Of a DNA stretch of 64,000 nt, positions 49,050-64,000 are shown in pieces (position 1 is the stretch's first letter; the number at the start of each line of letters is the position of its first letter). The DNA comes from Ophelia neglecta (lineage: Eukaryota): positions 55,490,001-55,554,000 of the forward strand of contig OZ260665.1 of the NCBI GenBank assembly GCA_965285935.1, written 5' to 3'. Below the pieces are notes generated by a model that had not been told where the DNA came from, made no database searches, and was given only the letters and a program-made list of their open reading frames with translations. The translations under genes were made by a program, and so were the position numbers.

Positions 49050-50862
49050 TTACGATAGGGAACTGATGCTGCTAGGAGACACGGAGAGACCGTCAGAGTC
49101 ATCCGTGTCACGTCCCCGAGAGAATTTTGAGGCGTAGTTGTTGAATCCTAGGGTGCTTGCTTCTGGCATGAAGGTAGATTTGCTGCCTGAAGTGGATGGT
49201 CTGTTGTCTGCGGCCCGCCATCGGCGGACTGCCCTGACTCCGAGGATCAGGGCGCCTATAGCCAGGGCGGTAAGCACAGCGCTCAGGGCCGAGGCGAGGC
49301 CGACGGTTGCCGTGCTCACCCCACTACCGGCCGCCACCGAGCCTACACCGACACCGGCCTCGGCAATCAAACCCTGGGCTGTAACAGACAAAAGGTAAGC
49401 TTATGGCATTGCTTTGTGGCTGTATACTGTTCGAAGATATCCATAATTAAGGCTTATTATTCCATCTAGTAATTATTTGTTGTTCTTTTTTAATCATAAA
49501 TGGGACCAATACTATAAATTGAGTAGTAGTATTGAGTTGTTCTTACCGCGGTTCTGCTGACAGAAGTAGCTGCCGTAGGTGTTGACACAGATGCTATTAG
49601 AACACGGGTTGCTTTCGGTACACTCGTTGATGTCCTCACAACTTCTTTGATTACTGTCTAAACGTAATCCATTCCCGCATTCGCATCTGTACAGTATAGA
49701 AATGAATCTTATGAATCTTGTCTTTATACAATATAATTGAATATAGTTTTAATGTTTGTTAAAGTCATTGCTGTCCCTTAAAATATAAATACACAGTATA
49801 CATTAATTGTATATATATTAATAGGAATTTTAAAATAACTAAATATTAGAATAATCAATTGTCAGATTATGTAATAATTACTTATATCTTAATTTATACT
49901 ATAAAGAAAAAATCCAGAGCCTGACAGGATGGGCGTGGCATCATTTGATGTGTACACCCAGTAATTGGATACATTAATTATACATGATATTGTATTAAAT
50001 GGCATGAATAACAAAAATGGAAATAGAAAATATAAATACACAGAAGCGATAAAATATGCAAAATAACAGTGCACACATCGTTTCATAATGTTTAAAAAGA
50101 CAAATCTTCAATCAAGTGAATAGTATCAATCAAATAATACTAAAATGTAGCAACATTCAATGTAAATGTAAAATCAGCTGAAATACTGTTTTAAAGATGA
50201 ATCACTGGCCATTTATATGTGGAAGATTATAGGTGGAAAGATTATATGTGGAAGATTATATGTGGAAACATGTAATGAATACGATTGCCTAGTAACATAA
50301 GAATAAATGTCACTACTGGTTCGAAACTACTTCTATACTGAAAATGAATATGCCAACTTTTATCTGTAAAATATATTGCACGAATGTTTTAATAACGATT
50401 TTTGGAATAGGATCCTTTCCTTGCCCTAATGACGAGCAAGCATGGAATGAATTATAAAATCTCGCCTGTAGCTGCCGCCGGTGTTGACACAGGAACCCTC
50501 ACATCCTCCATTGTTCAAGTTACACTCATTGATGTCTACAATATAAAGAGCATAACAAGAAAGTTAATATACTGCGTCACCCCTATGACTATACGCACAG
50601 TGTAGATAGTGATGACTCTACCTCCCGGTACGGTCATCACTACCTACACTGTGATACTAGCAGGAATGAGAGGTCAAATCTTTGTACCCCAGTTCTGCTC
50701 ATCAGCTATGCTGTAGGAAACGACAGGAATAATGAGATATGGAATATGAAAATTATGTCTACTTGCCCTCACACTCCGAGCCGTTGACTGGCCTGTGATC
50801 ACAGCGGCCGAAAGGACAGAAGCACTGGAGGTCTGCCACGGCTGTCTGACGACAATACGTAC
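49050..50862 (-). CDS. Gene B Cys module, EGF repeats, TM helix and cytoplasmic tail
   Basis: [32 protein letters not shown] / [41 protein letters not shown] / [29 protein letters not shown] / ...[31 protein letters not shown]...[34 protein letters not shown]. Confidence 0.87.
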
Positions 50863-53800
50863 CTTGAACACAATAACATCTCAACCTAAGTCACTGGCTC
50901 ACATTCTTTACGTACAGCCATCAAATTAAAATTAATGTCACATTTACCGTGCGTTGTTTAATATCCCGTTTCAAAATTTCAAATCATTGAAGAGTTGCAC
51001 CTATAGACAAGTAAGATCTACATTTCACCAATGCAGTTTAAAAATGCCAACATTACAGTCCCGCAGTGTTTTATTAAGTGAAATTAAGCTTTCTTTAGAT
51101 GCTCAGCTTGAAAGCTGCCCTATTTTCCTTGTCACTCTTTATGGTGTCTCCCAGGGGAGGTTACACATGACACCTGCGATATTTCGAGGTTAGCTTCCGA
51201 GGGACCCAATGGCTTGAGGCTTAGGGCTTTGAGGGTTTTTATTTCTTACCGAAGGTGGGTCTGCATGCAGCCCTGATCAGTGTTTCAGTGATTCCTGACA
51301 AGGACCGGAAGTCGGCTGCCATGTAGTAGTTAGAGTTGAGGCGTTGGGGGTTGGTAGACATTGCTCTAATTTCGTTCTCATCCACGCTGTTGGTGATACC
51401 GACACTAAAAACTGTGATGCCACGATTCTTGGCCACAAGAGCTTCAGGGATTGTACGAGCCTGGTCGATATTACTGCGGCCGTCTGTAAGGATGACCACC
51501 ACGTTATGGACCTCCACACGGTCCCCTCGGGATTCCGTGAAATGCTCTGCGTAGGCCGCCTTTATTCCGGCGGCAGTGTTGGTTTGTCCGCCGACATAAG
51601 ATGTCTGTCTGATAGCATTTCTCAGGTCGCCTTCGTTGTAATAAGAGTCGAGGTAGAATATATTATTAACAGAGTCGGCGTATCGGACGAGCCCCACTCG
51701 TGAATTGTACCGGCCGATGGTCAGACGGTCGGTGATGCTGACCACAAACTCAAGCATCTCACTCCAGTTGTCATAGTCACCATTTGGTGGATTGGCAGCG
51801 CGGATGGAACCGGAAGAGTCGAGAACGATGACCAAGTCCATCTGTATAGTCGAGCAATCGACGGTAACACCAGAACACGTCTGTGAGACCAGGGTCTCCA
51901 CCACCTAACATATACGAAACATTTATATTGAATCCTCTCTTGGTTTCATAAAACATAAAATTGAAAATGAAAAAGATAAAATAAATAGAGAAAGGTCAAG
52001 AAAGGTGACCTTAAAGTTGATAAAGCACCCTTGCTCATAACACTTGCAAACTGGTGCAAAGTTTGCAACAAATGACATGTCCAGTATCCGTAATTATAAC
52101 AGATTTATCAACCCATTATCCAGGTTACTATTTTGCCAATGCTTAACGTTTTGCACAATTCCGTTGTTCCTATATATACCGTGGTTTTGGTGCCAAGATA
52201 TATCAACCTTAAACCCCATCATATTAAATAACGCTGTAGCACGCCACGAATTTAACGAACCTGTAAGAATGTTTTAAACATATGTGGCATTTCTGGCATT
52301 CGAACGCACAACCCTTACGATGGCACCACCTTGCCCAACATAACCAGCAAATTTGCTTACAGGGGCTTAGCTGTTCTTTTTGTCTTACCTCGTCAAGAGC
52401 CCCGAAAGAGACACTTGTGAAGTAGTTCTGATCTCTGATCTGTGGGTCGGACGACATTTGTCTCAGCTCGTTCTCGTCGATGGCCTGAGTTACTCCTACC
52501 GAGTAAATCTTAATGCCAGCTTTACGGGCTGTTTCAGCCTCCGGAATGGTCCGGTCCTGGAATGGTCACAACAAACGTCAGTATGATTACCAGGAGAAGT
52601 AGTACCAAGGGTACTTTATTGTAAAGAACGATTTACCAGTCAAAGCTAAAAAGAATCTTGTTCAGAAACGTTTGAAATGTTAAAGAGCTCCAAAACTGTT
52701 CAAAGAGGAAAAGGCTGGATGGGGGTTCTTAGTATTAGCTTCAAAGTATGTTGGGTGCGCGCGCGCGCGTGTGCGTGTGTATGGGGGTGGGGTGGGGGGG
52801 TGGGGTGGGGGGGGGGGGGGTCAAGTAGCTCTTAATATAAAGTCACCTTTTAGAAGCGTTTTTGGATAATAATTTCCCTAAAGGAGTTTTATACTTCGGC
52901 CTAACTGAAGGTTTAAAGTAAACGGGCGCCTACCCTATCATAAGTAGATACACCGTCTGTGATGACGATGGCGATGTCGTCAATATCTATGGTAGAGGAA
53001 AAACAATTTCAATGTTTATAATATATGCATGCCTAAACATCATATTCGTCAGAATTAACATATTAAATTACACTTAATTATGAAAACACACTTTGCAGAA
53101 TGTAAAGACACAACAGGGAAAAACATTTATATTTATATACATAATATATATTAACATTTAACATATTGGTATGTATCAAATATGGATCAGTGACCATCTT
53201 AATTATTCAGTGACCAGCTTGACGTCGTCTCAAATTGATCAGAGGTCACATCAACTAATCAGTTAGCTGACCAATGAGTAGCCGGGGTCCCCAATGACCA
53301 GGCAAAATAATCCACCAGTGGTCACAACATAAACTAGCCACCGTACCACCAGGGCTACTCGCTAGTTACAATCACAAACTCATAACCATATAACTATTTT
53401 GTAAATCATAAGAGATCAGTTGCCACATTAACTGATTAAGCAGTGACAAACTTGGGTGCCTCGGTAATTTAACATACCTGTTCGATCGCCGCGGTTCCTT
53501 GTGAACTGTTGAGTGCGCATGACTAGGAGACCTCCGGAAGTGTTTGTGTTGGAGCCGACGTAGGAGATACTACGGATAGCGGCCTTCATATCGTTCTTGT
53601 TGTAGTACGAGTTGAGGTAGAAGACGTTTTCTCCAATGTCCGAGAACTTGACCACACCCACTCGGGTTTCGTCCTCACCAATGTTGAGGCGTTCGACGAC
53701 GCTGACTAAAAATTCTAACATGGTTTGCCAGTTGTCACTAGAGCCATCTGGCGGGTTATTGTCCTTGATCGACCCGGAGCTGTCCAGCACGAACACCAAA

Positions 53801-56800
53801 TCAGCTTTGGAGGTAGCGCAAGATGAAGAACCTATCAAAATATAAATCATTTTTTTTAAATTTCATAGTTAACATAATTGTTAAAAAATAGTAATAAACA
53901 AGATATTATAAATATAGGAACGCAAGTCCCAATCACACAAGCACACACAAGCCATAAACCAAGAAAAAGAACAAAACTAGAAAATACACACTATGTAGGT
54001 GACATATAATATAACATAACAAATATGGGATGAAATATTAGGAGAATAATTATACAAATAAAAGTAACAATCAAATATATATAAATCAAAATGATTTAAA
54101 AAATGTGAAACAATAAAAAAAACTACAGAGTGGAAACAATGGTGTGATACAAAGAGACCCCACACATGGACAGTGTCAGGGGAGAAAATAAGATAAAATA
54201 GCCAACGGACCGAGTAACTGTTAGCGTTGCACCTTTTTTTTTTATATTAATACCGTAGTAAGGGAATTAACGACGGATTACTTCAACATGTTTTAAACTT
54301 GTGCAGGAAGAAACACTATTTATAATTGGTGGAATGGAGTTCCAGAGCGGAGGCTCTCTATGTTGGAATGATTTTTTAAATTGTGGTTTAGGGAAGTATT
54401 AATGATCAGACTGTTTTTATTATTGTAGCGTTATATCTTGTCATAAACCCTGGCTTTCTTAGTTGGGTATTTACAATATCAAAGCAACTCCACATTAAGT
54501 GATTTTGGAGAAAAATATATACATACTGTTGTTAAACTAAAAGAAAACTTTAGGTGATTGATGGAGACTATTGTTAGTATCACCTGTGTGCCATGGAGGG
54601 CCAGATATTATGTTTATATTAATATTTATTTTGTTTTGTATCAGGACTTATATCAGGACCTACCTGAGCATGTGAGTTCCTGACCAGCGACTAGGTAGCC
54701 GGATTCGCAGGCGCAGAAGTAACTGTCATAGGTGTCGACACACAACTGAGAACAGCCACCGTTATCGTACAGACACTCGTTAACCGGGCACGAATCTGAA
54801 AACAACAGGTACTTTGTAAATTTTCTACTTTAACTAAATAGTTGTGTTAATAACAGGATATTCTATTTTACTATTGGCATTCCGTAAAATAATGGAATTT
54901 TATTGTCAGTACATGTATATATATAGCAATTAATCTCACCTCCGCCGCCGCCGGTTCCTGACGAACCAGGGGGCCCGGCAGGACCTGTGGCTCCTGTGCG
55001 GCCGGAGGGTCCGGAAGGTCCGCTGTCTCCCCTAGGTCCAGACGGCCCAGACGGTCCCGTGTGACCAGTGGCTCCAGTACGACCGAAACCTATAATACAA
55101 GAGCATGCCAAGCATCAATTCTCTGAGATGATAAGAATTGAAATATAACGGTGATAAGTTTTGGCGACGATTCTGCGGCTGTTATTGTAAAAGTCTGCCA
55201 ATAATGCGATAAATCCAATTTCCTTAGTAAGAAAAGGTTTAACTTAGTAATAAATACCATACAGTTTGAGGGTCTGCTTCAATAAACGGATTCTGTAATG
55301 GATTACCTGCAGGGCCAACAGGTCCCGTGTGTCCGGTGGCTCCAGTCCTGCCATCACGACCACTTTGTCCCGCGGATCCTGTTGCTCCAGTTCGCCCATC
55401 AGGACCGGACGGGCCAGTAAATCCCTGGCGGCCGGTGTGACCAGTAGCCCCAGTACGACCCACACCGGGTTGACCGGTATGTCCTGTCGAGCCATGGTTA
55501 CCCGAAGGCCCGGTGTGTCCTGTGGCGCCAGTGCGTCCTGGACCGCCAGAGCGACCAGTAGCCCCCGTCATACCAGAACTGCCGGCAGGGCCTGTGGCGC
55601 CGCTGCGACCACTGGTTCCTCGAGCACCGGTTGCTCCTGTCAGACCAGTAGGTCCAGTAGACCCACTGGCGCCTGTAGCTCCGGTGCGGCCGTTGGGACC
55701 TGATGGACCGGATGGTCCCTCACGACCGGTTGCTCCTGTAAGTCCAGCAGGCCCAGTGTGCCCGGTGGCGCCAGTACGGCCAGACGGACCAGACGGACCC
55801 GAGGGCCCGGTGAATCCTTGGCGTCCAGTGTTTCCAGTTGAGCCTGTAAATCGCACAAATTGATTAGCCCTACATCAATTGATAAATATATTTGTATAAC
55901 ATGTTTTAAACCGTATTATATATTATGAAATTTGTGACTTACCTGTTCGTCCAGAGGGTCCGCTTGGTCCAGTGGAACCTGTGTCTCCGCGGTTTCCTCT
56001 GGGACCGGTGTTGCCAGTAGCTCCTGTGCGACCCGCTGAGCCAGCAGAACCCGTCGCTCCTGTCCTGCCGTCTCTGCCATTAGGACCAGTAGGCCCGGAC
56101 GGCCCCGTGTTTCCGGTTGCTCCTAAAAGGGAAAGGGGATGATTCAAACGAAAACACGTAGCTTATAGATATAATGTCCAAACCATCACAATTTATTCAA
56201 ATTAGTATAAGTATATAGTATAGAAAAAAGGTGTGTAGATATGTTATCATAGAAAACAAATTTGGTATCCGTCAGAACAAGTAAATAAACGTGCAGCTGT
56301 TGATATATTTATACAACATTGATCAGTTCAAGTTTTATGTATTACCACCCATAAATTATAGTCAGAATTAAAAGTTATACAAAATTAGGCCTACTAGATT
56401 ACAGATGCTTTCAAGTTTGGCAGACTTTGATAATTATCTAATCTATTTAGTCGAGTTCTTAGACTTACATGCGCATTATGAATATATCTATAGATTATTT
56501 AAACAAAGACCTACCCAACAATATGCAGAAATTATTAAAGTCTAGAGACTAAGCAAATATACATTAATTTTACATAACATTAATATTAAAAAACCTTACA
56601 CATGCGCACACACTAAACACACGAGGATTAAGTGTCAAATGTGAAGCGACAAAGACTAAGTTAAATAAACAAATAAAACAACAGTACAAATAAACTCATA
56701 GGGTAAGATTTACAAATACAGACAAAAGAACAGATTATTAATAATGTTTCTACATAACTATCTTATATATCTTTTACTTTGTCCGAGACCTGAAAGATAA

Positions 56801-59800
56801 TAGGTTTGAATGATGCCAACCTGTTCGTCCATTGGGACCAGAGATTCCTCGCGGGCCGGTGGCTCCGGTCCGTCCAGTTGGTCCTGCACTGCCTGTAGCG
56901 CCAGTTCGTCCATTTGGTCCGCTGGGACCGGTGTCGCCTGGGCGTCCAGTATTTCCCGTAGACCCAGTGCGGCCAGAAGGTCCGCTGGCGCCCGTCGGCC
57001 CTGAGGACAAATAACTACTTTGTTCAAAACTGCAGAAGATTGGAATTATATTGAGCAGATTGTCAGTTGATCAATGGGATCAAATCAATGTTGGTAGGTA
57101 CTGTACCTGGTCTTCCGTCCCGCCCTGTAAAGCCAGTGCTGCCAGTAGATCCTGTTCTTCCGTTCGGTCCGGAGGGTCCTGAAGGACCCGTAAAACCTTG
57201 TTCTCCCGAGGCACCGGTAGCCCCAGTTCGTCCTGAGGGGCCTGCTGACCCTGTGGCCCCCGTGCGGCCTATTGGTCCAGTAGCCCCGGACGGGCCCCTT
57301 GGTCCCTCGCGGCCACTAGATCCAGTAGCTCCTGTCCGGCCTGGCCTTCCTTCAGGTCCGCTGGGTCCGGTGGCTCCAGTCCGGCCAGTATTACCTAATA
57401 GTCATATATTTATGTAGACTGACATTCAAGTATAAAGTTTTTATTTGTCTGACTGGAAAAAAGGAAACTGGCCTATCTTTTAATCCAAGCATACTGGTAT
57501 CTTTACATAAATATGTCAACTTTTAAAAATACCAGGTACATGCCTTTACCAGGTTTTGAGGCAGGATTTTATAGATCACTATTGTCCGGTTGACAATATT
57601 CGCGTATTTTAATTGAGACCTCCTAAGTGACTGAAAAAATGTTTTATTATGGATGTGGTCTGTTTAGACAGGCTATTTTTACTTTAAAAGTATATAGTTT
57701 GATTTTATAATAGTGGTCTGTATTGTCAGGTGGTCTGAATAGGGAGGTGTTCTTTACGGCTGGTTTTCACTGTAGTTATATTTGATAGTGTTGTTTACCT
57801 GTGCCCCCGGTCCTGCCAGACGGTCCCTCGGGCCCAGTGGGTCCAGGACGACCTGTTTGACCAGTGTTGCCAGTAGATCCAGTCCTTCCCGGGGGTCCTG
57901 AAGGACCAAAGTCTCCTCGGGGCCCGGGTGGGCCTGTTTGCCCTGTGGATCCAGTACGGCCAACACGACCAGTTTCACCTTAAACGCAACGACATATTTA
58001 TTTGTAGGCTTAACTCCATATACTTGTGAACTTAAAAGAGACGGGTTCTCCATAGGACGAGTGTCCATCAGGGCAGTCATTCCTACTCTCGGTGATGGCT
58101 AATTTTGCGATAAACAGGCCTAAGTGGAAAACCGCAGTTTTAAAACAGCGTTCTCAAACGTTATGAAATAAAATTATACAGTGCAACCTATTGATACAAT
58201 TCCACATTTAAGATTTCAAATCATTTATTTCAGCTGAGATATGATATTTTAATCGATACTGCCTTTTGCATCGGCTGAGATACTGCTATCTTCCATTGTA
58301 TTAATCACATGATACTGCTTTTGCCAATGTACTGATCATATGATACTGCTTTTTGCCCTTGCATCAGCTTTGTTACTGCTACCTGCCATTGCGCTTATCA
58401 TAGGATACTGCTTTTGCCTTTGTTCTAATCATACACTACTGCCAAGCGTAGAGGTCACGTCCATTAGTAGTAGTAAGCTTACACTCTGGAGGGGTTGATT
58501 AAATCGCATATTTTTATACAACATTGTGCATTGTAATTGGTATTATATCTAGATGAGCTGTGGGAAAGGCATACCGGTTGATCCTGGGTTGCCAACGCGT
58601 CCGGTGTTTCCAGTAGAGCCGGTTCGCCCTGATGGCCCAGCATTTCCTGTGGCTCCTGTCCTGCCGTTAGGGCCAGGGGGACCAGTGTTTCCGGTTGACC
58701 CAGTGCGCCCCAGTGGTCCAGAGGGTCCACTAGGCCCAGTAGCGCCAGTTCGACCTAGAGATAACCAGCAAATTATAACCATGAACGCTTCTCTGTGGTC
58801 CTACATCGCAACCTTTGCCTATTTCACCTATAAACATTTACTGTGCCATACTTTAAATTTATGAACGAAACCTTTGACAACTTTAAGCTAAGTCGTTAAC
58901 GGGTTATAATCTTTTGTAAACATGTTTATTAAACCACAGCAATTAGCGCACCTGATGGTCCGGGGGGACCAGTGTTTCCAGTACTACCGGTCCGACCGAC
59001 ACCCCCGGTGGACCCGGTTGCGCCGGGCCTGCCAGCTGGACCTGTAAAGCCGGTACCGCCAGTCCTTCCTATTCCAGTGGCTCCAGTCGATCCATCTCTG
59101 CCAGTGGCTCCTGTTCTTCCCGCTGAACCAGTGAACCCGGTGGCTCCAGTACGGCCGATAGGGCCAGAGTCACCTCTCGGGCCAGTTGCACCGATTGGGC
59201 CTGGGAAAGGGAGAGTCACACATGTGTTATATAAAAACGTAACTGTCATTCCCTCCTGCTATAAAATGGACAGTCAATTCTGGTGTTATCCTTCACTTAA
59301 ATGGAGAAGATGGGCACCAAGTAGTATACAAGGACTATGCACTCGAGGATAATCTTACAAACATATTACCTACACAATAATATACGTTTTAACTGCCGAA
59401 TAGAGGCCTACCCGTAGTTCCTGTTGATCCAGTTCTACCCCTGGGACCGGTACCTCCTGCCGGCCCAGTTGATCCGGGAGAGCCTGTAGCTCCCGTCCGT
59501 CCCACACCACCTCGTGCACCTGTGGCTCCAGTCAAACCAGTCGGACCTGTGTTTACAATGAGAGAAGGTTTCGTAACAGAGTTTCAGATAACTCTAAGCA
59601 GGCCCAATATCATGATATTCTAGAAATTGCCGCTTAGTATAGTTATGCAAAAGTAGTCGACCATATTTTACTCAATCCATGGGCGTGAATGGAGTGGGTC
59701 ATTTTCATTATTAAAGTTTTGTGACTATACCTGTAGAGCCCGATGCTCCGGTCCTTCCAACGGGTCCAGACGAGCCGGTAGCTCCGGTGCGTCCCAGGGG

Positions 59801-62800
59801 CCCGCGACCTCCGGTGGCCCCAGTAGGGCCGGCAGGGCCCGAGGACCCGGTGGCTCCAGTGCGACCGATGGGTCCTGCAGGACCCGTTGGGCCTGGTCCG
59901 CCAGTAAAACCTGTGGCTCCAGTACGCCCAATGCTTCCGGTAGCTCCAGCAGGTCCTATTGCATTTATAATAATGAATCAATTAATATGGACTTTATTTT
60001 TCCTTATATAAATGGTTCTGGATAAATGACAGGGTTCGATATCAAAGTCCACCTAACGGATGTTATGTGAACTAACGTGCCTGTTGAGCCAGGAGGTCCG
60101 CCTGGTCCGGTATTTCCGGTAGAGCCTGTTCTTCCCCTGGGTCCAGCCGGTCCAACCGGCCCAGTCGATCCTGGTTGGCCGGTATATCCAGTTCCTCCTA
60201 TTATATTTAAATCCAATGGTTGTCAATGTGATTTCGGTAATTTTATCATTCAAGTGAGAGGAACCGGGCTCCTCAATATATATTAAGCACAACAAAACAA
60301 TTATTCTTTAGGCATCTACATGGCTCTCTTTCTGTTGAAAATCGGGTTCCTCACTAAATAATCATAATATCATAAAGCAATACTATGGAACTTATATTTG
60401 CAACATTTCAAGTTCTATAACCAAAGGGATAAACTTCTCACCCGTATTTCCTCTAGGGCCACTGCCGCCTGTAGCTCCCGAAGGACCCCGGGCTCCTGTA
60501 TTACCTGTTGATCCCGTACGGCCGATAGGACCTGTTTGACCCACAGGCCCGGTGGGCCCCGTAAAACCTCGGTCACCAGTTAAACCAGTGGCACCTGTAC
60601 GTCCGATAGGCCCGGTCTGGCCTCGATCACCCTTTTCTCCCGTATTACCTGAAAACACTAATCAGCTATACAACGATTAAGGAACGAGGGGGGGGGGGGG
60701 GCATTTAAATTAGCAAAGAAATCAAATATTAGCTTGGAATTTAAAGAAAAATGAAGTAATTAACCAGTTGCTCCTGCGACTCCAGTTTCTCCGGTGGAGC
60801 CAGTCCTTCCTCGTGCCCCGGAGCCCCCAGTGGCGCCAGGCATGCCCCTCTCTCCTGTAAAGCCAGTAGCTCCTGTCCGCCCGATGGCATCTCTTCCGGG
60901 CGGTCCTTCCCGTCCAGTAGCTCCAGAGCGTCCTCGGGGTCCAATAGATCCAGTAGATCCTGTACGACCACGAGGGCCATCTTGTCCTTGTTGGCCAGAT
61001 GGGCCTGAGAAAGTGTGTTACATTAATTTTGTGACCAAGGTTAATAAAGTCTCCAGTGAAACATTTATAAAAAATAATTAAATTATAACCATCCATTGTG
61101 ATTTCGGTTCACCAGAAAACTATAACAGACAAGTATAAAAGATCTACCCGTAGATCCTCGGATTCCTGGTGGTCCCCTCTGGCCGGTAGCCCCTGTTCGC
61201 CCTGTGGGTCCGAATTGTCCTGGGGGCCCAGTAGATCCAGGCGAACCCGTACTCCCAGTCCTGCCTCTGGGACCATCCTGCCCGGTAGCCCCAGTAGCGC
61301 CTGGGCGGGCAGGCGCTGTAATGGAAACGTACAACTCAATCAACCAATACATTTAGTTACATTTTCCTGCAAATAATTGTCTTGTTGTCTTGATTCAGAT
61401 CATGTGTTTGCAGTTATTGGAATCATTGGTATGTATGCCTTGCCTACTGTTTTTAATTCAAAATTAATGATAACAATATATATGTCCTTTACTAAGATAA
61501 ATACGGCTGACATAACCAGGGAGATAATATAAAGATGAACGTCAGTTAGGGGCTTCCATAGGATTACCAGGGGACGAGGGAGGTTTAGAAGAAAAAAACT
61601 GCAATTAGGCAGTCCATCTTATTAATAACCTTAACTTGCCTAAAGCATACCCGATGAGACAAAGCTAAGCCCCTCCCCTCCCTCCCCTCGAAATCCAATG
61701 GAAACACCCTTCAAAGAGTATCTTTTTATATCCGTTTATTTTGGCATACTGACCTTTTTGCCTCTGCACAAATGAAGTCAAACATAGCATTAATCAAGTG
61801 AATACAATTTATTTGTATGTGTATAGACTTTTAATTGTATACAAGTGAGTGCAATAACCATACATGCCTGGTGGAATAATAATTATACTTAATAATAAAC
61901 TGCATGCTCATGGACAATTGTGCAAAAAAAGAGTAATACTCACTGGTCCAATTGAGACAAAACAAGAAATCTCAAGGTACATCATTCCAGTATTTGAAAA
62001 GTGACCCCCCCTCCCCGACAATTCGTGAGTAGGCCTACGTAGGAAATTCAGAAAATTATAGAATGAAAATGGGTGCTATGAGCCTAAGGCTGAAATTAAT
62101 GTAAATACAGCTGTAGGGATTGGAATAAACAGAGAGAGGCGACACGGCAGTAGAGATAAGAAGTATAGGATTCTGTAAGATCAGGTGCTTCCTTTGAATG
62201 GAAGCACAGAGGTGCGGCTGTTATCTTACTTGGAGGCGGGGCGGTCGGGCAGGCGACGGTGACCAGGCGGTCCAGGGTGGCCGTCAGCTTGATAAAGTCA
62301 TCGACAAAGAGCACGTCATCAGGCGTGGAGGCCACCGCGTTCAGCTCCGCTAAATTTATCTCCTTGGTTATACCAACCGCTAAAATTCTTATGTTATCCC
62401 GTTTGGCCGAATTGGCTTGTGGGATTGTGTCTGCCTTTCGTTCAGTCGACTCTCCATCTGTGATGAGAATGGCGACATTCTGGATGTTGGGGCGGTCTCC
62501 CCTGCGCGTGGTAAACAGTTGCTCATGCATCATCTGCAGACCATCGGCCGTGTTGGTTGTCCCTCCGATGTACGGAAACCGCCGGATGTGATTTACAAGC
62601 TCATTTTTGTTGTTGTAGGTATCGAGGTAGAACTGAATTTCAGCATTGTTGCTGTACACGACGGCGCCAACCCGTGCATCATTGCTGCTGATGGTGAACC
62701 GCTCGACAACCGTTCGAACAAAGGTTAGCACTCTATTCCAGTTCGAGCTATCCTGTGTGTTGATGCTTCCCGAGGAATCGATGACAAATACCAGATCGAT

Positions 62801-62817
62801 TGCTGCAACGCACCCTT
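49050..62817 (-). CDS. Gene B (5'-partial): paralogous VWA-collagen-EGF-VWA-EGF type I transmembrane collagen with Thr-rich helix
   Basis: Exons: 62230-62817, 61148-61315, 60765-61004, 60442-60648, 60081-60197, 59731-59955, 59412-59546, 58952-59200, 58575-58754, 57799-57978, 57107-57394, 56821-57000, 55943-56122, 55307-55843, 54940-55089, 54664-54795, 53478-53831, 52934-52986, 52389-52556, 51250-51904, 50767-50862, 50466-50535, 49547-49686, 49050-49378. Continuous frame to TAA; start codon not found in the window. Confidence 0.88.
50213..50268. repeat. 14-bp tandem repeat x4
   Basis: ttatatgtggaaga repeated. Confidence 0.8.
50596..50653 (-). other. 21-bp inverted repeat (hairpin) in a gene B intron
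   Basis: cacagtgtagatagtgatgac, 16-nt loop, gtcatcactacctacactgtg. Confidence 0.85.
51250..53831 (-). CDS. Gene B two C-terminal-side VWA domains
   Basis: 53478-53831 + 52934-52986 + 52389-52556 ([11 protein letters not shown]...NTNTSGGL...IAIVITDG...IYSVGVT) and 51250-51904 ([11 protein letters not shown]...GQTNTAAGI...VVILTDG...FSVGIT). Confidence 0.92.
54255..54646 (-). mobile_element. Decayed 3' fragment of an L2/CR1-group LINE ORF2 in a gene B intron
   Basis: Minus strand reads LIQNK...PWH... and [19 protein letters not shown], resembling the LQNKAIR...GPxLWNSLP C-terminus of LINE RT proteins; broken by frameshifts. Confidence 0.45.
54664..54795 (-). CDS. Gene B EGF-like domain directly after the helix
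   Basis: [44 protein letters not shown]; ttttcag and gtagg boundaries. Confidence 0.9.
54940..61315 (-). CDS. Gene B collagen helix (14 exons, 3036 nt, ~1010 aa)
   Basis: Gly-X-Y dominated by [15 protein letters not shown] and GPS; exon lengths 168, 240, 207, 117, 225, 135, 249, 180, 180, 288, 180, 180, 537, 150. Confidence 0.93.
57612..57774. mobile_element. Degenerate pogo/Tigger-like MITE in a gene B intron
   Basis: Repeated gtggtct motifs ending in ggttttcactg|ta, the same terminus type as the element at 10243-10392. Confidence 0.4.
58255..58443. repeat. Degenerate ~31-bp minisatellite in a gene B intron
   Basis: Recurrent gatactgct(t)ttgcc...atcata core, about 6 copies. Confidence 0.7.
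61548..61710. mobile_element. ~165-bp foldback MITE in a gene B intron
   Basis: Imperfect TIRs ggggcttccataggatt / aatccaatggaaacaccc, plus inner inverted pairs gggaggtttag/ctaagcccctccc and ttaggca/tgcctaa. Confidence 0.5.
62230..62817 (-). CDS. Gene B N-terminal-side VWA domain
   Basis: [16 protein letters not shown]...RVGAVVYS...[10 protein letters not shown]...[17 protein letters not shown]...ILAVGIT...ACPTAPPP. Confidence 0.93.
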
Positions 62818-63564
62818 CTGCAAAACGCGCCACGTGATTCAATAAAAAGCAACATCATCGACATATGAAGATTAAAGAACTAGCATTTAAGCAAATAATC
62901 ATGTTTTAATACAGTATTCTATTTTATTTTTCAAAGTATGGCATTTGCCATTCCTTTTACTTCTACTTAATTTACTAGCTGCATACATTAAGCCGCAAAA
63001 TTAAAAGACTAGCAAGCTTCTAAGCCTACAGTAAAATAAATTGTAGACCTATAAACGGCGTGTACAGAAAGGTCTTTAAAATGTATGACATTAAATTCTA
63101 ATATACAGACAAAATGGAAAGTCTTAATTCTTGAAAGCATCCTACATATAATGCGAACTGGGTTGTTTTTCGACTTCGAACAATTTTGAAGATCTCTGAT
63201 CATTCGTGTGGGAAATATTTAAAGCCAATTCCGATCGCTAGAGATTGAATTCTTCACTTTGCATATAAAGATATAAAGACCATATATGCAAAATCTCGTC
63301 GAAAAGACTTCATAATAAAGTTAGGCCTAATTGTCATAGTTAGGTATATTGTAATAGTTAGGTATATTGTTATAGTTACTTATTTGGGCTCTCTGACCTG
63401 GTGTCTTGTATAAACATAAAATATTATAATTATAATTGTCATAATGCATTGCTATACGCCATATATTTAGGTATGCAATCGCCCATCGAAGGACGCAGAC
63501 AACACTGGATTCTAGTTCTGTGTAGCCTATTAAAATGTGCATGAAGCTTCATACTTTAGATGTG

Positions 63565-63567
<3 letters not shown>

Positions 63568-63606
<39 letters not shown>
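63568..63606. repeat. (AT)n microsatellite
   Basis: Pure AT dinucleotide run. Confidence 0.95.
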
Positions 63607-63610
<4 letters not shown>

Positions 63611-64000
63611 ATGTGTGAGGGTGTAGGTGCATGTGTAACACTCGTTTCAAGTGACTAATTGCAAAGTATAAAATGAGTTGGAAAACCTCACCCCCTATAG
63701 GCAGAAAAACAAAAAAAATGAAAAAATAATGAAAAACTAACTCCAAAACCTTTTACCTTCAAGTATCCCCCTAAAACAGTTGATGCAGATAACCGGTGAA
63801 TAAAAGGTTTTGAAAAAACAAAAAAGCGCCCGATCCACATCCACATAATAGTGAAAGCTAGCGCATAGCCAAGGAAAGCAATATGTTAAACCTGCCATTA
63901 GGCAGTTTGTAAGCTTGTTTAAAAAACACAACACCTGTATCATGACACCCACTACGGTTAAACTTGATCCAAGTCCATTTTATCCTTGCACGCAATGTAG

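What the first reader, a model, noticed from the sequence alone, without database searches (positions are those of the whole stretch)
54940..61315. Gene B helix uses Thr/Ser instead of Pro at the Y position
Seen: a hand count for exon 55307-55843 gives Y=Thr in 31 of 59 triplets, Ser in 13 and Pro in only 2 ([12 protein letters not shown] motif); the other helix exons look similar and Lys is nearly absent. Established: the cuticle collagen of the vent tubeworm Riftia pachyptila is hydroxyproline-poor and stabilised by O-galactosylated Thr at Y. Inference: B is a glyco-Thr-stabilised, largely prolyl-hydroxylase (oxygen)-independent collagen and a candidate gene for annelid-type cuticle collagen chains.
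Basis: partly seen in the sequence, partly recalled or inferred. Interest (0 to 1): 0.78.

Follow-up and report, generated by a model that had tools for sequence, protein, structure and literature searches.

The report
Threonine-rich membrane-anchored worm collagen gene
A worm gene encodes a collagen rod that has threonine where most collagens have (hydroxy)proline, as in the sugar-stabilised cuticle collagen of vent tubeworms, but the rod is short and tied to the cell membrane, so a much longer sister gene is the better cuticle-fibre candidate.

Summary
On the minus strand, 14 exons (61315 to 54940) encode about 1,007 residues of Gly-X-Y. Y is Thr 51.5%, Ser 14.5%, Pro 6.6%, with one Lys; Thr at X is 0.9%.

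This is protein-level selection, not a young DNA repeat. All four Thr codons are used. Equal-sized exons are random at third codon positions. Thr positions, exon sizes and helix breaks recur in a paralog (C1:106.92 Mb) and in a homolog from another species, although synonymous sites are saturated.

Gene B is not a free fibre chain. It reads signal peptide, several VWA domains, a 0.29 µm helix, EGF, two VWA, EGFs, a C-terminal transmembrane segment and a short tail. The genome looks annelid.

Thr glycosylation is plausible but untestable here, and no RNA data exist. The cuticle-chain claim is weak: published cuticle collagens reach 2.4 µm. A 1,720-triplet, 68%-Thr gene at C8:46.01 Mb with the same anchor fits better.

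The scan had already noted that giant gene, and a proline-rich giant pair, on other DNA of this genome.

New here: a recurrent G-R-T-G-[A/S/G]-T-G motif, 44 copies.

The parts
62099..62842 (-). Last N-terminal VWA domain exon, directly upstream of the helix. More VWA exons and a signal-peptide-like exon lie beyond the window end, at C8:55554001-55561431 (= L048).
   Evidence: Pfam VWA E=3.9e-45. Upstream VWA exons. Signal-peptide-like exon at L048:7258-7431(-).
61148..61315 (-). Helix exon 1: a short lead-in of five residues, then 17 triplets.
60765..61004 (-). Helix exon 2. Contains break 1, an Ala-Ile pair (60883-60888) in place of Gly-hydrophobic, followed by GRTGATG.
60442..60648 (-). Helix exon 3 (23 triplets). 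The C1 paralog and L001 have an exon of the same size.
60081..60197 (-). Helix exon 4 (13 triplets). Its donor is G|GC, i.e. a GC-AG intron.
59731..59955 (-). Helix exon 5 (25 triplets).
59412..59546 (-). Helix exon 6 (15 triplets).
58952..59200 (-). Helix exon 7. Contains break 2, Gly-Ile-Gly at 59067-59075. This break is conserved in the C1 paralog and in L001. One RGD at 59169-59177.
58575..58754 (-). Helix exon 8 (20 triplets).
57799..57978 (-). Helix exon 9 (20 triplets). RGD at 57911-57919.
57107..57394 (-). Helix exon 10 (32 triplets).
56821..57000 (-). Helix exon 11 (20 triplets).
55943..56122 (-). Helix exon 12 (20 triplets). RGD at 55983-55991.
55307..55843 (-). 59 triplets plus break 3, Gly-Val-Gly at 55458-55466.
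54940..55089 (-). Helix exon 14. It starts with break 4 (Gly-Phe-Gly across the exon 13/14 junction) and ends in a Gly-rich run. RGD at 55025-55033.
54656..54805 (-). EGF-like (FXa_inhibition/EGF_CA) exon directly after the helix.
   Evidence: Pfam E=1e-11. 44% identical to the equivalent exon of gene A and 38% to an EGF exon of the C8 giant.
53431..53850 (-). C-terminal VWA domain 1, first half. The second half lies in a further exon near 52227-52565.
   Evidence: Pfam E=9.4e-25; blastp to gene A.
51242..51904 (-). C-terminal VWA domain 2.
   Evidence: Pfam E=3.2e-41
50429..50563 (-). EGF_CA-like exon.
   Evidence: Pfam; blastp to gene A.
49515..49748 (-). cEGF / EGF_CA exon.
   Evidence: Pfam E=1.4e-8. 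47.5% identical to gene A's exon and 54% to the C8 giant's exon.
49050..49400 (-). Last exon: a hydrophobic stretch of about 21 residues (transmembrane), followed by Arg-Arg-Trp-Arg, a Ser-rich tail of about 65 residues, and the stop codon at 49050-49052.
   Evidence: Translation. A weak tail match to gene A. The same RRWR stop-transfer motif follows the TM of the C8 giant.

Best explanation
Gene B encodes a type I (C-terminally anchored) cell-surface collagen of an annelid.

Its domain order is signal peptide, several VWA domains, a helix of about 1,007 residues (about 0.29 µm) with four one-residue-type breaks, EGF, two VWA, EGFs, a transmembrane segment and a short cytoplasmic tail.

In the helix, Thr (51.5%) and Ser (14.5%) fill the stabilising Y position in place of Pro/Hyp. 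This is organised around a recurrent G-R-T-G-[A/S/G]-T-G unit. The composition is maintained by purifying selection and is shared by a sub-family of anchored collagens in this genome.

The most likely mechanism, which is inferred and not shown, is that the Y-position Thr residues are O-glycosylated in the secretory pathway. The sugars would then supply the helix stability that hydroxyproline supplies elsewhere, as in the Riftia cuticle collagen.

Gene B itself is a short, membrane-tethered, VWA-bearing member of the family. It is more likely a pericellular or apical-matrix linker than the giant fibre-forming cuticle chain. That role fits the 1.47 µm, 68%-Thr paralog at C8:46.01 Mb better.
For: SHOWN
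- Composition and position specificity.
- Intact phase-1 exon chain with canonical splice sites.
- VWA, EGF and TM modules on the same strand and in the same order as in gene A.
- All four Thr codons are used: ACT 69, ACA 44, ACC 41, ACG 18.
- Equal-sized exons are 50-65% identical in protein but only 27-42% identical at third codon positions.
- A paralog at C1:106.92 Mb has the same exon sizes and Y = Thr 45 / Ser 20 / Pro 4.
- Homolog L001, from another species, has pS 0.65-0.75 against gene B. Even so, Gly is 143/143 identical, and Thr/Thr is kept at 59 Y sites against 38.6 expected. Across gene B, the C1 paralog and L001, 36 sites are Thr in all three, against 16.9 expected. The Gly-Ile-Gly and Gly-Val-Gly breaks are also conserved.
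- GRT is followed by G[ASG]T in 40 of 41 cases, against a 23% background. The same coupling holds in the paralog, in L001 and in the C8 giant.
- The C8 giant has about 1,720 triplets, Y = Thr 68%, EGF exons and a TM segment followed by RRWR.
- Annelid-type haemoglobin linker genes are present.

FROM THE LITERATURE
- Riftia cuticle collagen is stabilised by glycosylated Thr, and (Gly-Pro-Thr)10 folds only when galactosylated (PMC11766948, PMC11923368, PMC10141479).
- Cuticle collagens have a very long helix, up to 2.4 µm (PMC11766948, PMC2443231).
Against: - There is no expression data of any kind. Transcription, tissue and splice pattern are therefore unverified.
- Glycosylation cannot be read from sequence, and the responsible enzyme is unknown.
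- Membrane anchoring rests on a hydrophobic stretch plus a basic stop-transfer motif in the last exon, not on experiment.
- Attaching the upstream VWA exons and the signal-peptide exon (outside the window) to gene B is an inference from strand and order.
- Unmodified Thr at Y might be enough for a helix in a cold-living animal.
- A short anchored chain could still be a minor cuticle component.
Confidence: 0.6

Rival explanations
1. One reading: gene B is itself a chain of the annelid cuticle fibre collagen, a glyco-Thr helix that works independently of prolyl hydroxylase.
For: - The Thr/Ser-rich, Pro-poor Y position resembles what is reported for Riftia cuticle collagen (PMC11766948).
- The genome looks annelid.
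- Annelid cuticle collagens are said to carry globular domains (PMC11766948), and gene B has VWA domains.
- Gene B shares its anchor module with the giant Thr-rich gene.
Against: - The rod is 0.29 µm, against the very long helices (up to 2.4 µm) described for cuticle collagens (PMC11766948, PMC2443231).
- Two better-sized candidates exist in the same genome.
- The chain is membrane-anchored.
- Twenty-two Y-Pro residues remain, and several P4H genes are present.
Confidence: 0.12
2. The Thr residues are not the Riftia-type galactosyl-Thr stabiliser. Either they are unmodified and the helix is simply of low thermal stability, adequate for a cold-water worm. Or they carry mucin-type O-GalNAc glycans. 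In the second case the rod would act as a hydrated, protease-resistant, mucin-like cell-surface coat, with stability a side issue.
For: - Thr/Ser/Pro/Ala-rich sequence is the usual substrate context of mucin-type glycosylation (general knowledge).
- Gene B is cell-surface anchored.
- X-position Pro is still 27.7%.
- Composition-matched relatives in the databases are bacterial and viral collagen-like proteins, which use other sugars (PMC11923368).
Against: - (Gly-Pro-Thr)10 without sugar does not fold (PMC11923368).
- The strict restriction of Thr to Y (171 versus 3 at X) and its positional conservation point to a helix-geometry role, not a general mucin-like composition.
Confidence: 0.25
3. 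The gene is a decaying or unexpressed duplicate in a collagen gene cluster, and its composition is a relic.
For: There is no RNA evidence. The gene sits in a cluster of paralogs.
Against: - All 14 helix exons and all flanking domain exons are open, with usable splice sites.
- Every Gly in the compared exons is conserved despite saturated synonymous change.
Confidence: 0.03

Closest known systems
Riftia pachyptila cuticle collagen (Mann et al. 1996, as cited in PMC11766948, PMC11923368, PMC10141479)
   Same: Animal (annelid) collagen. Thr, not Hyp, dominates the stabilising Y position, and proline is low there.
   Different: - That protein is known only as a biochemical entity. I found no gene for it in the searchable literature.
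- It is a very long fibre collagen, whereas gene B's rod is 0.29 µm, carries VWA domains on both sides and has a C-terminal membrane anchor.
- Glycosylation of gene B is untested.
Giant annelid collagens (about 5,000-5,700 triplet-pattern matches; the longest Alvinella prediction is 8,859 aa) reported for alvinellids and Eisenia (PMC12403961, Table 1)
   Same: Same phylum. This genome has equivalents at C1:92.97-93.09 Mb with X-Pro about 40% and Y-Pro about 22%, close to the published 33-40% and 22-33%. They also carry VWA exons upstream.
   Different: Those are proline-rich at both X and Y, with only about 5% Thr at Y. Gene B is about one ninth of that length and is Thr-rich.
Collagen VI / VWA-flanked collagens and matrilins
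   Same: VWA domains lie on both sides of a triple helix, and EGF modules sit next to VWA as in matrilins. The nearest named VWA hits are 'cartilage matrix protein-like' and 'collagen alpha-1(XII)'.
   Different: The helix is about three times longer than the collagen VI helix (general knowledge), has no Cys, and is Thr-rich. Gene B has a C-terminal transmembrane segment.
Vertebrate membrane collagens (XIII, XVII, XXIII, XXV)
   Same: A collagen rod held on the cell surface. Neighbouring gene A was reported by this scan to have furin sites suggesting shedding (untested here).
   Different: Those are type II proteins anchored at the N-terminus (general knowledge). Gene B has an N-terminal signal peptide and a C-terminal anchor, the opposite orientation.
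Bacterial and giant-virus Thr-rich collagen-like proteins (BclA type, Pithovirus)
   Same: Gly-X-Thr-rich helices. They are the best-scoring hits for the helix exon. Thr glycosylation is documented for BclA (PMC11923368).
   Different: The resemblance is in composition only. Gene B is an intron-split animal gene with VWA, EGF and TM modules and has no BclA-type C-terminal domain.

Membership tests
Collagen superfamily (Pfam PF01391) | Long uninterrupted Gly-X-Y repeats | tested here: met
   Pfam Collagen E=5.6e-28 on exon 13. 332 triplets with four short breaks.
Riftia-type glyco-Thr cuticle collagen | Thr dominates the Y position and Hyp/Pro is scarce there | tested here: met
   Y = Thr 51.5%, Pro 6.6%.
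Riftia-type glyco-Thr cuticle collagen | Thr carries galactose units that stabilise the helix | not testable with these tools
   This needs glycoproteomics. Only the literature precedent is available (PMC11923368, PMC10141479).
Riftia-type glyco-Thr cuticle collagen | Very long triple helix (micrometre scale) forming cuticle fibres | tested here: not met
   Gene B's helix is about 1,007 residues, or 0.29 µm. Cuticle collagens reach up to 2.4 µm (PMC2443231, PMC11766948). The C8:46.01 Mb paralog has about 1,720 triplets, or 1.47 µm.
Riftia-type glyco-Thr cuticle collagen | Made by the epidermis and deposited in the cuticle | not testable with these tools
   No RNA runs are available for this organism.
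Riftia-type glyco-Thr cuticle collagen | Annelid origin | tested here: met
   Eryth_link_C (PF16915) genes at C9:13.86-13.88 Mb score 61 bits, and none of the control genomes matched. Giant collagens like those published for annelids are present (PMC12403961). The species was not identified.
Collagen VI-like VWA collagens | VWA domains N- and C-terminal to the helix | tested here: met
Collagen VI-like VWA collagens | Short helix of about 335 residues containing Cys; a secreted microfibril protein | tested here: not met
   The helix is about 1,007 residues with no Cys. A terminal TM exon is present.
Membrane collagens of vertebrates (MACIT, XVII) | Type II orientation with an N-terminal signal-anchor | tested here: not met
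   The hydrophobic segment followed by RRWR lies in the last exon, before the stop codon. A cleavable-looking signal peptide lies upstream.
BclA-type bacterial collagen-like proteins | Bacterial gene with a C-terminal BclA/C1q-like trimerisation domain | tested here: not met
   Gene B is intron-split, with animal VWA and EGF modules. PF18573 occurs only in the bacterial hits.

The most novel reading that the evidence does not exclude
The G-R-T-G-[A/S/G]-T-G unit is the acceptor sequon, or helix-clamping unit, of a still unknown collagen threonine glycosyltransferase. On this reading the C-terminally anchored Thr-rich collagens form one assembly system for the annelid cuticle. Short VWA-bearing members such as gene B would sit on the epidermal cell or microvillar membrane and nucleate or tether the giant Thr-rich fibres.
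Probability: 0.15. Interest if true: 0.8.

Novelty: new variant of a known kind. Interest (0 to 1): 0.55.

Why it matters
That threonine-linked sugar can replace hydroxyproline in an animal collagen has been known from protein chemistry for about 30 years (Riftia). In the literature I could search, no gene, sequence rule or enzyme is attached to that result.

This locus and its relatives give gene-level sequences. They show that Thr at Y is an old, selected trait of a whole sub-family and not a vent-specific oddity. They also supply a concrete repeated motif that can be synthesised and tested, and the motif could be used to look for the transferase.

Separately, the family is anchored by its C-terminus, the opposite way round from the known membrane collagens.

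Tried and rejected
- Species identification via mitochondrial COI: a 129-aa stop-free piece was searched. It returned 4,823 unnamed COI fragments and no usable names. The phylum call therefore rests on the haemoglobin linker domain.
- Word search with helix exon 13 and the ESM Atlas: both returned only bacterial and viral Thr-rich collagen-like proteins. The 0.55-1.75x length window excludes full-length animal collagens, so this says nothing about animal relatives.
- RNA evidence: no RNA run holds the locus. Read laying was not used, because only DNA contigs of the probable source sample were offered.
- Mann et al. 1996 is not held in the library, so the published Riftia peptides could not be compared.
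- Paper searches for Gly-X-Thr animal collagens found only bacterial cases.
- L001 was first taken as the ortholog of gene B. The VWA comparison shows it is nearer the C1 paralog, 60% against 51%, so it is cited as a sub-family homolog.
- The whole-library protein search was not run. The operators flagged it as costly, and no claim here rests on absence of relatives.
- Structure prediction was not run, because collagen rods are uninformative for it.
All searches were exon by exon, by reference. Exon translations were concatenated only inside local scripts, for counting.


Full report
OBSERVATION

The window is animal DNA of about 37-48% G+C. On the minus strand, a six-frame scan for Gly-X-Y runs finds 17 runs between 61301 and 54932. 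A second, larger set, gene A, lies between 34937 and 22212.

Inspecting the flanks shows that every run starts just after an AG and ends at G|GT. The Gly codon is split between exons, so all exons are phase 1. Three pairs of runs are separated by only six bases and belong to single exons. Exon 4 uses a G|GC donor.

I find Thr 30 (31 with the Thr of the break), Ser 13 and Pro 2 in 59 triplets.

Over 332 triplets, the Y position is Thr 51.5%, Ser 14.5%, Arg 6.9%, Pro 6.6% and Ala 5.4%, with a single Lys. The X position is Pro 27.7%, Arg 19%, Ala 15.7% and Ser 12.7%, with Thr 0.9%. The Y-versus-X asymmetry for Thr has Fisher p = 1.5e-59.

IS IT MORE THAN A REPEAT ARTEFACT?

Several results say it is.
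- Thr at Y uses all four codons: ACT 69, ACA 44, ACC 41, ACG 18.
- The four 180-nt exons are 50-65% identical as protein but only 27-42% identical at third codon positions, which is near random. They are old duplicates held in composition by selection on the protein.
- A paralog at C1:106.9238-106.9293 Mb has the same series of exon sizes (216, 126, 234, 144, 135/117 ... 297, 189 ... 153, counted as runs). Its Y position is Thr 45%, Ser 20%, Pro 4%.
- A contig from an ENA assembly, locus L001, carries a VWA exon followed by collagen exons of the same sizes. It belongs to another species, with about 66% nucleotide identity in the VWA exon. It is somewhat nearer the C1 paralog than gene B: VWA identity is 60% against 51%.
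- Against gene B, synonymous sites are saturated (pS 0.65-0.75). Yet all 143 Gly are identical, and Thr is kept at 59 Y sites against 38.6 expected by chance. Across gene B, the C1 paralog and L001, 36 Y sites are Thr in all three, against 16.9 expected.

A finer pattern also emerged. GRT triplets are followed by G[A/S/G]T in 40 of 41 cases, against a background of 23%. This gives 44 copies of G-R-T-G-[A/S/G]-T-G in about 1,000 residues. The same coupling holds in the paralog (29/32), in L001 (11/14), in the giant Thr-rich gene described below (63/66) and, more weakly, in gene A (7/15).

All four helix breaks have the form [Gly/Ala]-hydrophobic residue, directly followed by this unit. Two of the breaks are conserved in the paralog and in L001.

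WHAT THE GENE IS

Everything lies on the same strand.
- Upstream of the helix is a VWA exon at 62099-62842 (Pfam E=3.9e-45).
- Beyond the window end there are four or five more VWA exons and a signal-peptide-like first exon.
- Downstream of the helix, in order: an EGF-like exon (54656-54805); a VWA domain (53431-53850 plus a second exon); a second VWA (51242-51904); EGF_CA and cEGF exons (50429-50563 and 49515-49748); and a last exon (49050-49400).
- The last exon encodes about 21 hydrophobic residues, then Arg-Arg-Trp-Arg, a Ser-rich tail of about 65 residues and the stop codon.

Gene A has the same downstream order and a weakly similar tail.

Gene B is therefore predicted to be a type I membrane protein with a 0.29 µm collagen rod between VWA blocks. 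Assigning the out-of-window exons to gene B, and the membrane insertion itself, are inferences. No RNA run exists for this organism.

GENOME CONTEXT

The genome is 762 Mb, and the window is C8:55490001-55554000. It contains genes with the erythrocruorin linker C-terminal domain (61 bits; none of the control genomes matched), which supports an annelid. A COI search gave no names.

A Pfam Collagen scan of the genome, followed by composition counts, shows at least three kinds of large collagen.

1. A head-to-head giant pair at C1:92.97-93.09 Mb. X is Pro about 40% and Glu about 25%. Y is Ala 28, Pro 22, Arg 21, Ser 15 and Thr about 5%. These values are close to those published for the giant collagens of alvinellids and Eisenia (PMC12403961, Table 1).
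2. A giant gene at C8:46.0118-46.0324 Mb on the minus strand. It has about 1,720 triplets (about 1.47 µm) and Y = Thr 68%. Its helix is followed by EGF exons, two of which match gene B's EGF exons (38% and 54% identity), and by a TM exon followed by Arg-Arg-Trp-Arg.
3. The short Thr-rich pair: gene B and the C1:106.92 Mb paralog.

Gene A is intermediate, with Thr 21% and Pro 23% at Y.

Thr at Y is therefore a trait of a sub-family of C-terminally anchored collagens, and gene B is one of its short members. The genome also has several prolyl 4-hydroxylase alpha genes, two clusters of which are on the same chromosome.

COMPARISON WITH WHAT IS KNOWN

The Riftia cuticle collagen is reported to owe its stability to many glycosylated Thr residues. 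[quoted passage not shown] Cuticle molecules up to 2.4 µm were measured (PMC2443231, citing Gaill 1991). Ac-(Gly-Pro-Thr)10 is a random coil unless every Thr carries beta-galactose (PMC11923368, citing Bann 2000).

I found no paper that assigns a gene to the Thr-rich cuticle collagen. The Alvinella genome paper reports giant collagens but discusses only proline.

My recollection that the Riftia cuticle molecule is about 1.5 µm long is from memory and could not be checked here. If it is right, it matches the C8 giant, not gene B.

VERDICT

Gene B's helix chemistry resembles the Riftia case, and glyco-Thr stabilisation is the best available mechanism. I put it at about 0.5-0.6, and it is inferred.

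The cuticle-chain assignment is weak, at about 0.12. The rod is five- to eight-fold too short, the chain is anchored and VWA-flanked, and better-sized candidates sit in the same genome.

'Oxygen-independent' is overstated, because 22 Y-Pro and 92 X-Pro remain per chain and P4H genes are present.

I classify the finding as a new variant of a known kind. Its main value is as part of a family that makes the old Riftia question testable at gene level, and in the recurrent GRTG[A/S]TG unit.

PROCEDURAL NOTES

All database searches were done exon by exon, by reference. The N run at 9989-10242 was left untouched.

Noticed in passing
window 54940-61315 (-), whole helix: The unit G-R-T-G-[A/S/G]-T-G occurs 44 times. 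40 of 41 GRT triplets are followed by G[ASG]T, against a 23% background. The same coupling is seen in the C1 paralog (29/32), L001 (11/14), the C8 giant (63/66) and gene A (7/15). It is absent from the proline-rich giant pair.
   Followed up: partly
window 60883-60888, 59067-59075, 55458-55466, 55085-55089 (-): All four helix breaks have the same form, [Gly/Ala]-hydrophobic (Ile, Ile, Val, Phe), immediately followed by GRTG. The Gly-Ile-Gly and Gly-Val-Gly breaks are conserved in the C1 paralog and in L001.
   Followed up: partly
window 60079-60081 (-): Exon 4 ends at a G|GC donor (a GC-AG intron). All 13 other helix exons use G|GT.
   Followed up: no
window 59169-59177, 57911-57919, 55983-55991, 55025-55033 (-): There are four Arg-Gly-Asp motifs inside the helix. 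They are not conserved in the C1 paralog or L001 where those can be aligned.
   Followed up: partly
G000:C8:46011789-46032392 (-) and TM exon 46005706-46006215 (loci L033, L034, L039, L040): A giant collagen gene with about 1,720 triplets and Y = Thr 68% (top triplets GST, GAT, GPT, GFT). It is followed by EGF exons and a transmembrane segment with the same RRWR stop-transfer motif as gene B. It is a better size match to a micrometre-long Thr-rich cuticle collagen.
   Followed up: partly
G000:C8:46116092-46119190 (+) (L044): A further Thr-rich (about 40% at Y) collagen exon series lies on the opposite strand, about 85 kb from the giant gene.
   Followed up: no
G000:C1:92973435-93004797 (-) and 93057445-93088809 (+) (L005-L032): A head-to-head giant collagen pair with X = Pro about 40% / Glu 25% and Y = Ala / Pro / Arg / Ser, with Thr about 5%. 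Top triplets are GPA, GPS and GPR. VWA exons lie at 93011596 and 93053832. The composition is close to published giant annelid collagens.
   Followed up: partly
G000:C1:106919543-106930054 (-) (L051, L052): A paralog of gene B on another chromosome has identical helix exon sizes, Y = Thr 45 / Ser 20 / Pro 4, a VWA exon 53% identical (pairwise alignment; 51% in the genome search) and a TM exon 42% identical.
   Followed up: partly
G000:C7:10037213-10040722 (+) (L018, L026, L028): A 681-aa open frame holds an extremely regular collagen-like repeat. Y is only Ala (52%) or Arg (48%), and X is Gln 40 / Glu 39 / Lys / Arg. No proline is among the commonest residues at either position. Its nature is unknown.
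   Followed up: no
G000:C9:15404785-15408420 (-) (L029): A single open frame of 1,054 aa is collagen-like, with Y = Gln 28 / Ile 17 / Lys 16 / Pro 14 / Glu 14 and X = Pro 45 / Asp 16 / Val 16. It appears to have no introns.
   Followed up: no
L048:179-5783 and 7258-7431 (-) = C8:55554179-55561431: Upstream of the window there are four or five more VWA exons, some joined by Thr/Pro/Gln-rich linkers, and a signal-peptide-like first exon. This is probably the N-terminal part of gene B.
   Followed up: partly
G000:C8:62018803-62027816 (+): A tandem array of at least six VWA exons, 42-49% identical to gene B's VWA. Locus L002, from the same ENA sample as L001, shows a similar array of eight VWA genes.
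   Followed up: no
G000:C8:55957958-55963195 (+): Prolyl 4-hydroxylase alpha N-domain matches lie only about 0.4 Mb from the collagen cluster. One match contains a TGA.
   Followed up: no
window 63560-63650: A TA-rich microsatellite, which reads as Tyr-Ile repeats in translation, lies between the VWA exon and the window end.
   Followed up: no
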